Shown: positions 12,784 through 14,554 of the stretch, piece by piece
Layout: each line of letters begins with the position of its first letter
How positions within the stretch are numbered: position 1 is the stretch's first letter
DNA from: Oikopleura dioica
Lineage: Eukaryota > Animalia > Chordata
Direction of reading: 5' to 3'
NCBI GenBank assembly: GCA_907165135.1
Contig: OU015568.1
Span: forward strand, 1,674,001 to 1,738,000
DNA length: 64,000 nucleotides
The notes under the pieces: model-generated
What the model was told of the DNA's origin: nothing
What the model saw: only the letters and a program-made list of their open reading frames with translations
Database searches by the model: none
Translations under genes and position numbers: made by a program

Positions 12784-14554
12784 ATGCCTCTTTCGCTTTT
12801 CGGTGGACCGAAGCTGGAAGACATCCTGCTGACACTAAGAATGCAGGAAAAAACACTTGAGCGCGAAGCCAAACGAGCAGAAAAGGAACACAACGCGCTG
12901 AAAGCAAAAGTGAAGAAAGCTATCGCAGAAAAGCGTATTGAATTCGCCCAGATTCACGCTGAATCTGCCGTCCGCAAGCGCAACGAAGCTCTCAAGTATG
13001 AAATTTCTCGCAACTTCTGTTCATTATTTATTTTTCTAGCTATCTTCGTCTTGCATCGAGGATGAACGCAGTCGGCAGCAAGATCAAGTCCGCGCAGAAC
13101 ATGCAGAAAGTGACAAGAGAACTGGGTACAACAACCAAGAGCCTTGAAAAAGTCATGAAAACCATGAACCTCGAAAAGGTAAATATAGCAGGGTGGAACA
13201 TTCGGGCAAAAATTTTGGGTCTGGCCGGCCGATTGCCCGCCGATGCCCGGAAATTTTCATCGGCGCCGGGAAAAACCGGCGAAATTTCGGACGCCCGGCT
13301 TTGCCCGGCGCAGATTTCTGCCCGATTTTTGTCCGGCGCCGATTTTTGCCCGACTTTACTTCGGCGCCGATTTCTGCCCGGCCGCCAACAATAATTCCGG
13401 CGCCGATATTCTATGGACAAAATTAGGACGCCGATTTACTCGACTAAGAAATGAGTGAATGTAAAAATTTCGTGATATGAGCCCGGTTAGGCAGTAGAAA
13501 GTCATTCTTTATAAAAAGGAGGATAATTTCACCGTATGACAAACATGTCGACCATAAAAAGGAAAGTTCCTTAATAATAATTAACAATAATCGAGAGTAG
13601 TGGATTGAAAATGTTAGTATTAGTGCTTCCCTGGTTGGCCCGCCGACTTTTTTTCCCGCCCGCCAACTTTTTCCGGGCGCCGTTTTTCCCGGCCGATGGT
13701 GCCTTTTTCGGGCGCCGACTTTGCCCGACTGCCCGAAGTTGCCCGTTTTTTTAGCCAAAATATGACCCTCGCGCCGGCCGTTTGCCCGCCGTTGCCCGGC
13801 GCCGACCAATTTGCCCGAGTTTGCCCGGCCGAATGTTCCACCCTGAATATAGATAACTAAGGTGGACTTCCAATTTAATCTGCCAAGGGTGCACCTTAAT
13901 TTCCATCTGATTGTCCCAATCTAGTACTTTAACACCTTTTTAGAATCCTCTCGACGAGATATTTTTATTTATCGAGAAAAAAATTAAAAAACTAGAATCG
14001 TTTGGAACTTATAGGGACTTGAAAAATGCATTAGAAATCACAAAAACCGATAAAAATCCGATAAAAAGTCCGAAATTCAAAAATCGGCTTCCATATGGGA
14101 AAAGAGCAGCTAAAGACGATTCTAAAAAGGTTTGATACTTGGGGGTTCTAATGGAAACTTTTTCCGGAAATCGAAAAGCAAATCTGGCAGATTAAATTGA
14201 AAGTCCACCTAAGCGCAAACCCAACGGCGAATTTTTAAGATCACTGCGACGATGGACAAATTCGAGACGCAATTCGAGAACCTTGATGTCGTCACTTCAA
14301 CGATGGAGAGCTCTATGGAAGGTGCTATGGCTACAGGAGGGCAGACAGCGCAAGTTGACGATCTTATCGCCCAAGTCGCTGGTGAAAATGGACTCGAACA
14401 AGAGCTTGAACTGCTCAAAGCTCCAGAAGCGAACAAATCGTAAGAAAATAGACGAAAAATGAACCTGTTTTGAAAAAATCTTTCTAGTGTCGCCGCTCCA
14501 GCAGCCCAAGAAGCAGATGACATCAATGCACGCCTTCAAGCTCTTCGAAATTAA
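12784..14554 (+). CDS. CHMP1: charged multivesicular body protein 1 (ESCRT-III, Did2/Vps46; CHMP1A-like)
   Basis: EAKRAEKE...KVKKAI...HAESAVRKRNEAL, KVMKTMNLEK|ITATMDKFETQFENLDV, VDDLIAQVAGENGLE and the C-terminal MIM1-like DDINARLQALRN*. Confidence 0.95.
13189..13845. mobile_element. 657-bp non-autonomous DNA transposon (MITE), 17-bp TIR, 7-bp TSD; P- or hAT-like ends
   Basis: CAGGGTGGAACATTCGG at 13189 and its reverse complement ending at 13845; AATATAG at 13182-13188 and 13846-13852; GC-rich subterminal TTGCCCG/GGCGCCG repeats around an AT-rich core. Confidence 0.9.
13861..14209. mobile_element. 349-bp PIF/Harbinger-type (Tourist-like) MITE, 25-bp TIR, TAA TSD
   Basis: GGTGGACTTCCAATTTAATCTGCCA at 13861; TGGCAGATTAAATTGAAAGTCCACC ending at 14209 (1 mismatch); TAA at 13858-13860 and 14210-14212. 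Confidence 0.9.

What the first reader, a model, noticed from the sequence alone, without database searches (positions are those of the whole stretch)
13858..14213. Harbinger MITE that is itself a perfectly removable GT-AG intron (introner architecture)
The left junction reads TAA|G GTGGAC, so TSD plus the first TIR base give AG followed by a GT donor at 13862. The right junction reads CACC TAA G, giving an AG acceptor at 14212-14213. Splicing 13862-14213 leaves ..ATAACTAAG|CGCAAAC.., exactly the pre-insertion sequence. Any copy landing in an exonic TAAG in this orientation would be a frame-neutral new intron. MITE-derived introners are established in some algae; activity of this family as one is inference, and GTGGAC is a weak donor. 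Here it is an intron within an intron.
Basis: partly seen in the sequence, partly recalled or inferred. Interest (0 to 1): 0.8.

Follow-up and report, generated by a model that had tools for sequence, protein, structure and literature searches.

The report
Small transposon built like an intron
A 349-base jumping element sits harmlessly inside an intron of an Oikopleura dioica gene, but its small family always lands so that it could be cut out of RNA without a scar, and sister copies inside conserved coding exons suggest that this animal gains new introns this way.

Summary
Window 13861-14209 is a 349-bp MITE with 25-nt terminal inverted repeats (24/25) and a TAA duplication. Removing 13862-14213 would restore the pre-insertion CTAAG exactly.

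The genome is Oikopleura dioica OKI2018_I69, a tunicate.

The TAAG context is not chance. Of 18 paired elements of this group in the genome, 16 sit in C|TNA|G and start GG(T/C/A). Every insertion is therefore bracketed NAG|G(T/C/A)...NAG| on both strands.

"Harbinger" is not supported. The genome has no DDE_Tnp_4 match, and the long partner elements encode an orphan protein.

The window copy is passive. It lies in a formerly 45-nt intron of a CHMP1-like gene, and none of the five near-identical copies forms an intron of its own.

Sister subfamilies, however, split the CLU domain, a RING-H2 finger and a cyclase tail, and one sits at a TYW4 exon end.
- A metatranscriptome contig joins the CLU exon exactly across the element. 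An empty allele cannot be excluded.
- A wild DNA contig carries the same RING-exon insertion, diverged inside the element, while the coding sequence shows five silent changes and one replacement.

Splicing is likely but not shown by RNA from carriers. The scan has noted similar exonic MITEs of other families in this genome. I rate this a new member of a known kind (introner-like).

The parts
13861..14209 (.). 349-bp non-coding MITE (family 1, ends GGTGGAC...GTCCACC)
   Evidence: five copies at 97-100% identity in the genome, plus a 4,040-bp element with the same 25-nt TIRs.
13861..13885 (+). Left terminal inverted repeat
   Evidence: exact pattern match; 0 matches expected by chance.
14185..14209 (-). 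Right terminal inverted repeat (1 mismatch to the left one)
13858..13860 (.). Left copy of the target-site duplication TAA (preceded by C at 13857)
14210..14212 (.). Right copy of the target-site duplication TAA (followed by G at 14213)
13862..14213 (+). Hypothetical nested GT...AG intron (352 nt). Its removal would restore the pre-insertion CTAAG.
   Evidence: Read directly from the sequence. No RNA evidence for use at this locus.
13179..14239 (+). Host intron 2 of the CHMP1-like gene (1,061 nt; 45 nt before the two MITE insertions)
   Evidence: GTAAAT donor, TTTTTAAG acceptor, and the frame continues across exons. Snf7 hit on exon 2.
13189..13845 (.). Second, unrelated MITE in the same intron (TIR CAGGGTGGAACATTCGG, 7-bp duplication AATATAG)
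   Evidence: one other full copy at 96%, a split copy at 99%, and fragments.
12784..12995 (+). CHMP1-like exon 1 (starts at ATG)
13040..13178 (+). CHMP1-like exon 2
   Evidence: PF03357 Snf7, E = 2e-5.
14240..14439 (+). CHMP1-like exon 3
   Evidence: open frame MDKFETQFENLDV...
14488..14554 (+). CHMP1-like exon 4, to the TAA stop

Best explanation
The feature is a young, non-autonomous copy of a small Oikopleura dioica cut-and-paste transposon group of about 20 elements. The group inserts into the palindromic site C|TNA|G and duplicates 3 bp. This could equally be read as a 5-bp CTNAG duplication with ends GT...AC.

The window copy landed in a 45-nt intron of a CHMP1-like gene and is most likely removed passively together with that intron. 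It needs no splice sites of its own.

All elements begin GG(T/C/A) and end with the complement. Every insertion is therefore bracketed NAG|G(T/C/A)...NAG|, on either strand. Spliceosomal removal of the element plus one duplication would restore the original sequence exactly.

Shown:
- the anatomy of the element;
- the target rule;
- the position of four sister elements in or at coding exons of conserved genes (CLU, RING-H2 E3 ligase, adenylyl/guanylyl cyclase, TYW4/LCMT2);
- the ancestral uninterrupted CLU exon in a relative;
- an mRNA-derived contig with the exact CLU junction;
- a wild haplotype that shares the RING-exon insertion.

Inferred: that these exonic copies persist because they are spliced out as new introns, helped by this species' tolerance of weak and non-GT donors, and perhaps by the long terminal hairpin that brings the two ends together.
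For: Anatomy and copies.

Target rule: (16 of 18 paired elements are C|TNA|G).

Organism: one search returned a hit named Oidioi.mRNA.OKI2018_I69.chr1.g924 on a 14,533,022-nt contig, the same length as C4. One search gives 64,281,565 bases in 19 contigs, matching PMC8008620.

CLU:
- The element splits Pfam CLU into profile positions 1-129 and 131-225.
- CLU is single-copy in the assembly.
- Tara metagenome DNA of a related lineage has the uninterrupted exon with CTCAG.
- A metatranscriptome contig skips exactly 352 nt, with GT..AG on the gene strand.

RING:
- The element splits zf-RING_2 at profile position 34 of 44.
- Wild contig L060 (98.9% identical) carries the same insertion with identical junctions but lacks the nested 583-bp TE.
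- Element arms differ at 14 of 292 positions plus 3 indels. The coding blocks compared differ at 5 of 684 (Fisher p = 9e-5). Over all coding exons there are 5 silent changes and 1 replacement.

TYW4: the downstream 483-codon exon is intact.

Species tolerance: 11% of introns are non-GT/AG (PMC8008620).
Against: There is no RNA from an animal known to carry any of these insertions. The three raw-read RNA runs gave zero reads on the CLU locus, so they are no test.

The one junction contig comes from a wild haplotype that differs from the assembly at 2 positions, and it could simply derive from an empty allele.

The CLU and cyclase copies are 99% identical to each other. They are therefore very recent and could be rare deleterious alleles in the one haplotype that was assembled. 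The assembly comes from a single male with merged haplotypes.

The donors GTGGAC, GTCCGG and GCAGGG differ from the GTA(A/T) donors of all seven natural introns I read in these loci.

Both putative splice sites of the window copy lie inside a 26-bp terminal stem, which could hinder their recognition.

The group is tiny.
Confidence: 0.65

Rival explanations
1. It is an ordinary MITE and nothing more. The GT...AG bracket is a by-product of the target site CTNAG and a GG terminus. The exonic sister copies are recent, polymorphic loss-of-function insertions that selection has not yet purged. The RNA junction comes from animals without the insertion.
For: The CLU and cyclase copies are 99% identical. 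The assembly is one merged haplotype of a single male. The junction contig differs from the assembly by 2 SNPs, and no contig covers the element. The donors are weak and the splice sites lie inside a stem. About 4 exon-associated elements out of roughly 20 is near what random insertion would give in a genome this gene-dense.
Against: The RING-exon insertion is shared with an independent wild DNA contig. It has diverged 4.8% inside the element and has gained a nested TE in one haplotype, while the coding sequence shows 5 silent changes and 1 replacement. CLU is single-copy and split inside its conserved domain. The TYW4 downstream exon is intact.
Confidence: 0.27
2. The window copy itself is used as a nested intron. 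It would be removed first at 13862/14213, which restores the 45-nt host intron for a second splicing step.
For: The sites exist and their removal is exact. The two MITEs stretched the intron from 45 to 1,061 nt, against a median of 49 nt in this genome. The long hairpin brings the two ends together.
Against: No RNA was examined at this locus. The host donor and acceptor are intact and far stronger. GTGGAC is a poor donor. Long introns do exist in this genome. The second MITE (13189-13845) would remain in the intron anyway.
Confidence: 0.08

Closest known systems
Introner elements of Micromonas pusilla (IE1 type; Huff et al. 2016, as summarised in PMC11282704 Fig. 2, and Gozashti et al. 2022, PMC9860276)
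   Same: A short TIR-bearing DNA transposon with a 3-bp duplication (TCA in the published example). The element supplies the 5' GT or GC. The 3' AG comes from the duplication plus the flank. Removal leaves the mRNA unchanged: the NAG|GY...NAG layout.
   Different: Those families have hundreds to thousands of copies, mostly as spliced introns with RNA support. Here there are about 20 elements, 4 of them exon-associated, and splicing is unproven. The host is an animal (a chordate). Long partner elements with an orphan ORF are present.
MITE-derived non-canonical introns of Fritillaria borealis (Henriet et al. 2019, as summarised in PMC11282704)
   Same: A larvacean tunicate in which introns carry TIRs and target-site duplications, and in which the spliceosome tolerates unusual ends.
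   Different: The Fritillaria introns are mostly AG-AC or AG-AT and very numerous. Here the predicted ends are G(T/C/A)-AG, the class already known in O. dioica, and the copies are few and young.
PIF/Harbinger Tourist-like MITEs
   Same: A 3-bp duplication, often TAA or TTA, in an extended palindromic target. TIRs begin with GG.
   Different: The duplications here also include TCA, TGA and CAA. The genome has no DDE_Tnp_4 transposase match. The long elements with the same ends encode an unrelated orphan protein, with only a faint DUF7869-like signal.

Membership tests
MITE (non-autonomous TIR transposon) | Short and non-coding, with terminal inverted repeats, a target-site duplication, several near-identical copies and a related longer element | tested here: met
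   Five copies at 97-100% identity. The 4,040-bp element at C4:3500544-3504583 has identical 25-nt TIRs and subterminal similarity of 90-92%.
Introner elements | The element plus its duplication provide both splice sites, so that removal restores the exon exactly | tested here: met
   Shown at the sequence level for the window copy and for 16 of 18 elements.
Introner elements | Copies coincide with introns that RNA shows to be spliced | tested here: inconclusive
   one metatranscriptome contig has the exact 352-nt skip at CLU, but the genotype of its source is unknown. Three raw-read runs gave no reads. Indirect support comes from the shared RING insertion.
Introner elements | A family with many genic copies that make up a visible share of the introns | tested here: not met
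   about 18 paired elements plus 2 solo ends in 64 Mb. Three are inside coding exons and one is at an exon end.
PIF/Harbinger | Autonomous partner encodes a DDE_Tnp_4 transposase (PF13359), usually with a Myb-like second ORF | tested here: not met
   no PF13359 match in the whole genome; no Pfam family for the ORFs of the long elements; the only homolog by word search is the genome's own copy.
PIF/Harbinger | 3-bp TWA target-site duplication | tested here: inconclusive
   TAA and TTA, but also TCA, TGA and one CAA. The data fit a 5-bp CTNAG duplication equally well.

The most novel reading that the evidence does not exclude
This orphan-transposase group, with target C|TNA|G and termini GGT, GGC or GGA, is a working intron generator in a chordate. 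Each insertion into an exon becomes a scarless G(T/C/A)-AG intron closed by a terminal hairpin. Decayed copies of such elements would then be a main source of Oikopleura's fast intron gain and of its peculiar G*-AG non-canonical introns.
Probability: 0.2. Interest if true: 0.85.

Novelty: new member of a known kind. Interest (0 to 1): 0.6.

Why it matters
Oikopleura dioica is known for extreme intron turnover and for about 11% non-GT introns, and the source of both is unsettled. This transposon group has an insertion rule that guarantees scarless G(T/C/A)-AG removal. Copies have been caught inside conserved exons, and one is shared between wild haplotypes. Together these would let intron birth be tested directly in a chordate that can be cultured, genotyped and injected. 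If the copies are not spliced, the same loci instead show how many disruptive insertions a single animal of this species carries.

Tried and rejected
1. L004, a family-1 copy, looked exonic because its empty site lies in a 174-codon open frame. Reading the sequence showed a 42-nt GTAAGA...TTTTCAG intron that happens to be open in frame. I rejected it as an exonic case.

2. The 4-kb element next to UFD1 also looked exonic. It lies in an intron, 8 nt upstream of the acceptor.

3. Raw RNA reads of three runs labelled with the species gave zero reads on the CLU locus at 95% likeness. This is no test; the runs are probably from another cryptic lineage.

4. I tried to fetch the published OKI2018 gene models for CLU, TYW4 and the element ORF. 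The length filter or withheld records blocked this.

5. Exact-ORF look-ups for wild contigs found nothing at CLU, the cyclase or the window's CHMP1 gene.

6. The Tara contigs for TYW4 start 64 nt downstream of the element, so they do not show its state.

7. A scan of the window for further C|TNA|G-bounded TIR relics found only the known element.

8. Classifying the long elements' protein gave nothing firm: no Pfam family, no homolog by word search, and only a language-model lead to DUF7869, which no held paper mentions.

Exon pieces were searched separately by reference. Flanks were joined only inside local scripts, to read frames across empty sites.

Full report
**What is there**

Window 13861-14209 is a 349-bp non-coding element.
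- Its 25-nt ends are inverted copies of each other (24/25). No shuffle of the window gave two such matches.
- It is flanked by TAA at 13858-13860 and at 14210-14212.
- The junctions read CTAA|GGTGGAC and GTCCACC|TAAG. A GT therefore stands at 13862-13863 and an AG at 14212-14213.
- Removing 13862-14213 (352 nt) restores CTAAG once.

**Host gene**

The element lies in a four-exon gene on the + strand: exons 12784-12995, 13040-13178, 14240-14439 and 14488-14554. Exon 2 matches Pfam Snf7, and the protein reads like CHMP1/Did2.

Intron 2 (13179-14239) holds this element and a second, unrelated MITE at 13189-13845, which has a 7-bp duplication (AATATAG). Without the two insertions the intron would be 45 nt. 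So the element is indeed an intron within an intron, and it does not need to be spliced on its own.

**Organism**

The genome has 64,281,565 bases in 19 contigs. A word search returned a protein named Oidioi.mRNA.OKI2018_I69.chr1.g924 [Oikopleura dioica] on a contig of 14,533,022 nt, which is the length of C4. The published OKI2018_I69 assembly is 64.3 Mb in 19 scaffolds. It comes from one male with merged haplotypes. Its median intron is 49 nt, and 11% of its introns are non-GT/AG (PMC8008620). The RNA holders were marine metatranscriptomes.

**The family**

Family 1 has GGTGGAC ends. It comprises five MITEs at 97-100% identity and one 4,040-bp element with identical TIRs. A subfamily 75% alike, with ends GGCAGGG and GGTCCGG, has four full copies and one partial copy. 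A scan for the conserved TIR core preceded by AG found more subfamilies. In total there are about 18 paired elements and 2 solo ends.

Sixteen of the 18 paired elements are flanked C|TNA...TNA|G. One has CAA as its duplication, and one has an imperfect duplication. The target is therefore the palindrome CTNAG. The data cannot separate a 3-bp duplication with G...C termini from a 5-bp duplication with GT...AC termini.

Either way, every insertion is bracketed NAG|G(T/C/A)...NAG| on both strands.

**Not Harbinger**

Pfam DDE_Tnp_4 has no match anywhere in the genome. The long elements (C4:3500544, C3:2399712, C2:5248040, C2:3931838, C4:7864242) share an ORF of about 380 codons plus downstream exon-like ORFs. 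These have no Pfam family and no homolog by word search other than the genome's own annotated copy. A protein-language-model lead points to DUF7869 clusters of invertebrates. The superfamily remains open.

**Where the copies sit**

Family 1:
- the window copy, in the CHMP1-like intron;
- L004, in a 42-nt intron that is open in frame by chance;
- L002, about 290 nt upstream of a coatomer-gamma-like start;
- L003 and L005, in non-coding sequence;
- the 4-kb element, in a UFD1 intron 8 nt from the acceptor.

None of these coincides with an intron of its own.

Sister subfamilies behave differently.

1. C2:7910125-7910473 splits the conserved CLU domain between ...RVTAQ and SIIPGILEREQ... The two halves match Pfam CLU positions 1-129 and 131-225. 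CLU is single-copy in the assembly. The gene strand reads CAG|GTCCGG...CCCTGCCTCAG|T.

2. C4:7587031-7587380 is 99% identical to the CLU copy. It lies 22 codons before the stop of an adenylyl/guanylyl cyclase gene, in the same orientation.

3. C1:7544928-7545275 lies in the last 4 nt of an LCM-domain exon of a TYW4/LCMT2-like gene, directly before the native GTAAGG donor. Here the sense strand offers a GC donor. The downstream 483-codon exon is intact.

4. C2:7177344-7178220 (877 bp) splits a RING-H2 finger between ...HPPCIRDWL and RLHNSCPVCR... zf-RING_2 profile positions 3-34 of 44 lie upstream of the element. The gene strand reads TAG|GTAGAG...CTCTTCCTTAG|G. This element is a roughly 294-bp MITE with another 583-bp TE nested inside it.

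**Evidence on splicing**

CLU:
- Tara metagenome DNA scaffolds of a related lineage (77% nucleotide identity) have the uninterrupted CLU exon with CTCAG. The insertion is therefore derived, and no intron stood there before.
- A metatranscriptome contig (246 nt, depth 4.2) joins the CLU exon across the element. It skips exactly 352 nt, with GT..AG on the gene strand and 5 ambiguous letters.
- That contig differs from the assembly at two positions, and nothing in that run covers the element. It may come from spliced carriers or from animals without the insertion.
- The three raw-read runs gave no reads at all, so they are no test.

RING:
- A wild DNA contig was found through an exact 95-residue exon-1 ORF (L060, an ENA assembly, 98.9% identical). 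It carries the same MITE at the same RING-exon site, with identical junctions, but without the nested TE.
- Between the two haplotypes the element arms differ at 14 of 292 positions, plus three indels. The coding blocks compared differ at 5 of 684 positions (Fisher p = 9e-5). Other non-coding flanks differ at 9 of 955.
- Over all coding exons there are five silent changes and one replacement.

This insertion is therefore not private to the sequenced male. It has had time to diverge, and the gene around it still looks constrained. That is what a real intron would show. Recombination could have placed older flanking variation next to the insertion, so this is strong circumstantial evidence and not proof.

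**Points against**

- The donors GTGGAC, GTCCGG and GCAGGG differ from the GTA(A/T) donors of the seven ordinary introns I read in these loci.
- The window element folds into a long hairpin (-102.7 kcal/mol, z = -6.6) that buries both putative sites in a 26-bp stem.
- The CLU and cyclase copies are very young.
- The share of exon-associated copies (4 of about 20) is not above what random insertion would give in so compact a genome.

**Comparison with what is known**

The layout NAG|GY...NAG is that of the Micromonas IE1 introner. There the element brings GT or GC, and the AG comes from a TCA duplication (PMC11282704). Gozashti et al. describe the same class (PMC9860276).

Introns derived from MITEs, with tolerance of odd ends, are reported in the larvacean Fritillaria borealis (Henriet 2019, via PMC11282704). 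Transposon insertion is listed as a source of Oikopleura introns, citing Denoeud 2010 (PMC3443670); I could not read that paper.

The group fails the copy-number feature of introners, and the RNA feature is inconclusive. It works like an introner on paper, and one element behaves like one in population data.

Notes from this scan report exonic hAT-type MITEs in the same genome. One note claims RNA proof for another family. I did not test those claims.

**Verdict**

"Harbinger" is rejected as unsupported. The window copy is a passive intronic MITE. The group it belongs to is a credible, low-copy, introner-like system in a chordate. I put the probability that exonic copies are spliced as scarless introns at about 0.65.

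Noticed in passing
window 13189-13845: A second, unrelated 657-bp MITE lies in the same intron. It has the TIR CAGGGTGGAACATTCGG, a 7-bp duplication AATATAG and GC-rich internal GCCCG-type repeats. Together the two insertions stretched a 45-nt intron to 1,061 nt. The genome holds one other full copy (96%), a split copy (99%) and many fragments.
   Followed up: partly
L055:1535-5640 (C2:5248034-5252139); also L028, L027, L030, L059: These elements are 3.5-4.4 kb long, with 170-340-nt inverted ends of the same group. They encode an orphan ORF of about 380 codons plus two further exon-like ORFs (motifs ...QSDGA... and ...SGHGKG...). An internal array of roughly 63-nt tandem repeats is open on both strands. 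There is no Pfam family, only a language-model lead to DUF7869. This may be an undescribed transposase lineage.
   Followed up: partly
L057:1403-1985 (C2:7177502-7178084): A 583-bp TE of another, abundant family (dozens of copies at 83-93%) is nested inside the RING-exon MITE of the assembly. It is absent from the wild contig L060. Its insertion is therefore polymorphic and lies inside a candidate new intron.
   Followed up: partly
L027:1045-5084 (C4:3500544-3504583): The 4-kb element sits only 8 nt upstream of the acceptor of a UFD1 intron of about 105 nt. The original branch point is now about 4 kb from the 3' splice site, so how this intron is still removed is unclear.
   Followed up: no
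L053 and L054 against L052:4341: Two independent marine metagenome contigs (95.5% and 97.9% identical to the genome) both begin at the same AT-rich position, 64 nt downstream of the TYW4 element. This looks like an assembly break and leaves the state of that insertion in the wild unknown.
   Followed up: partly
L036:1-1497 (C1:14655636 onward): A partial subfamily-2 copy abuts a long run of N in the genome copy. The run is either a gap or a withheld stretch.
   Followed up: no
runs X8-X10: About 1.5-1.8 billion letters of raw RNA reads were read from each of three runs labelled with the same species. None of them laid a single read on a 3.3-kb stretch of a housekeeping gene at 95% likeness. 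This fits the deep divergence between O. dioica cryptic lineages.
   Followed up: no
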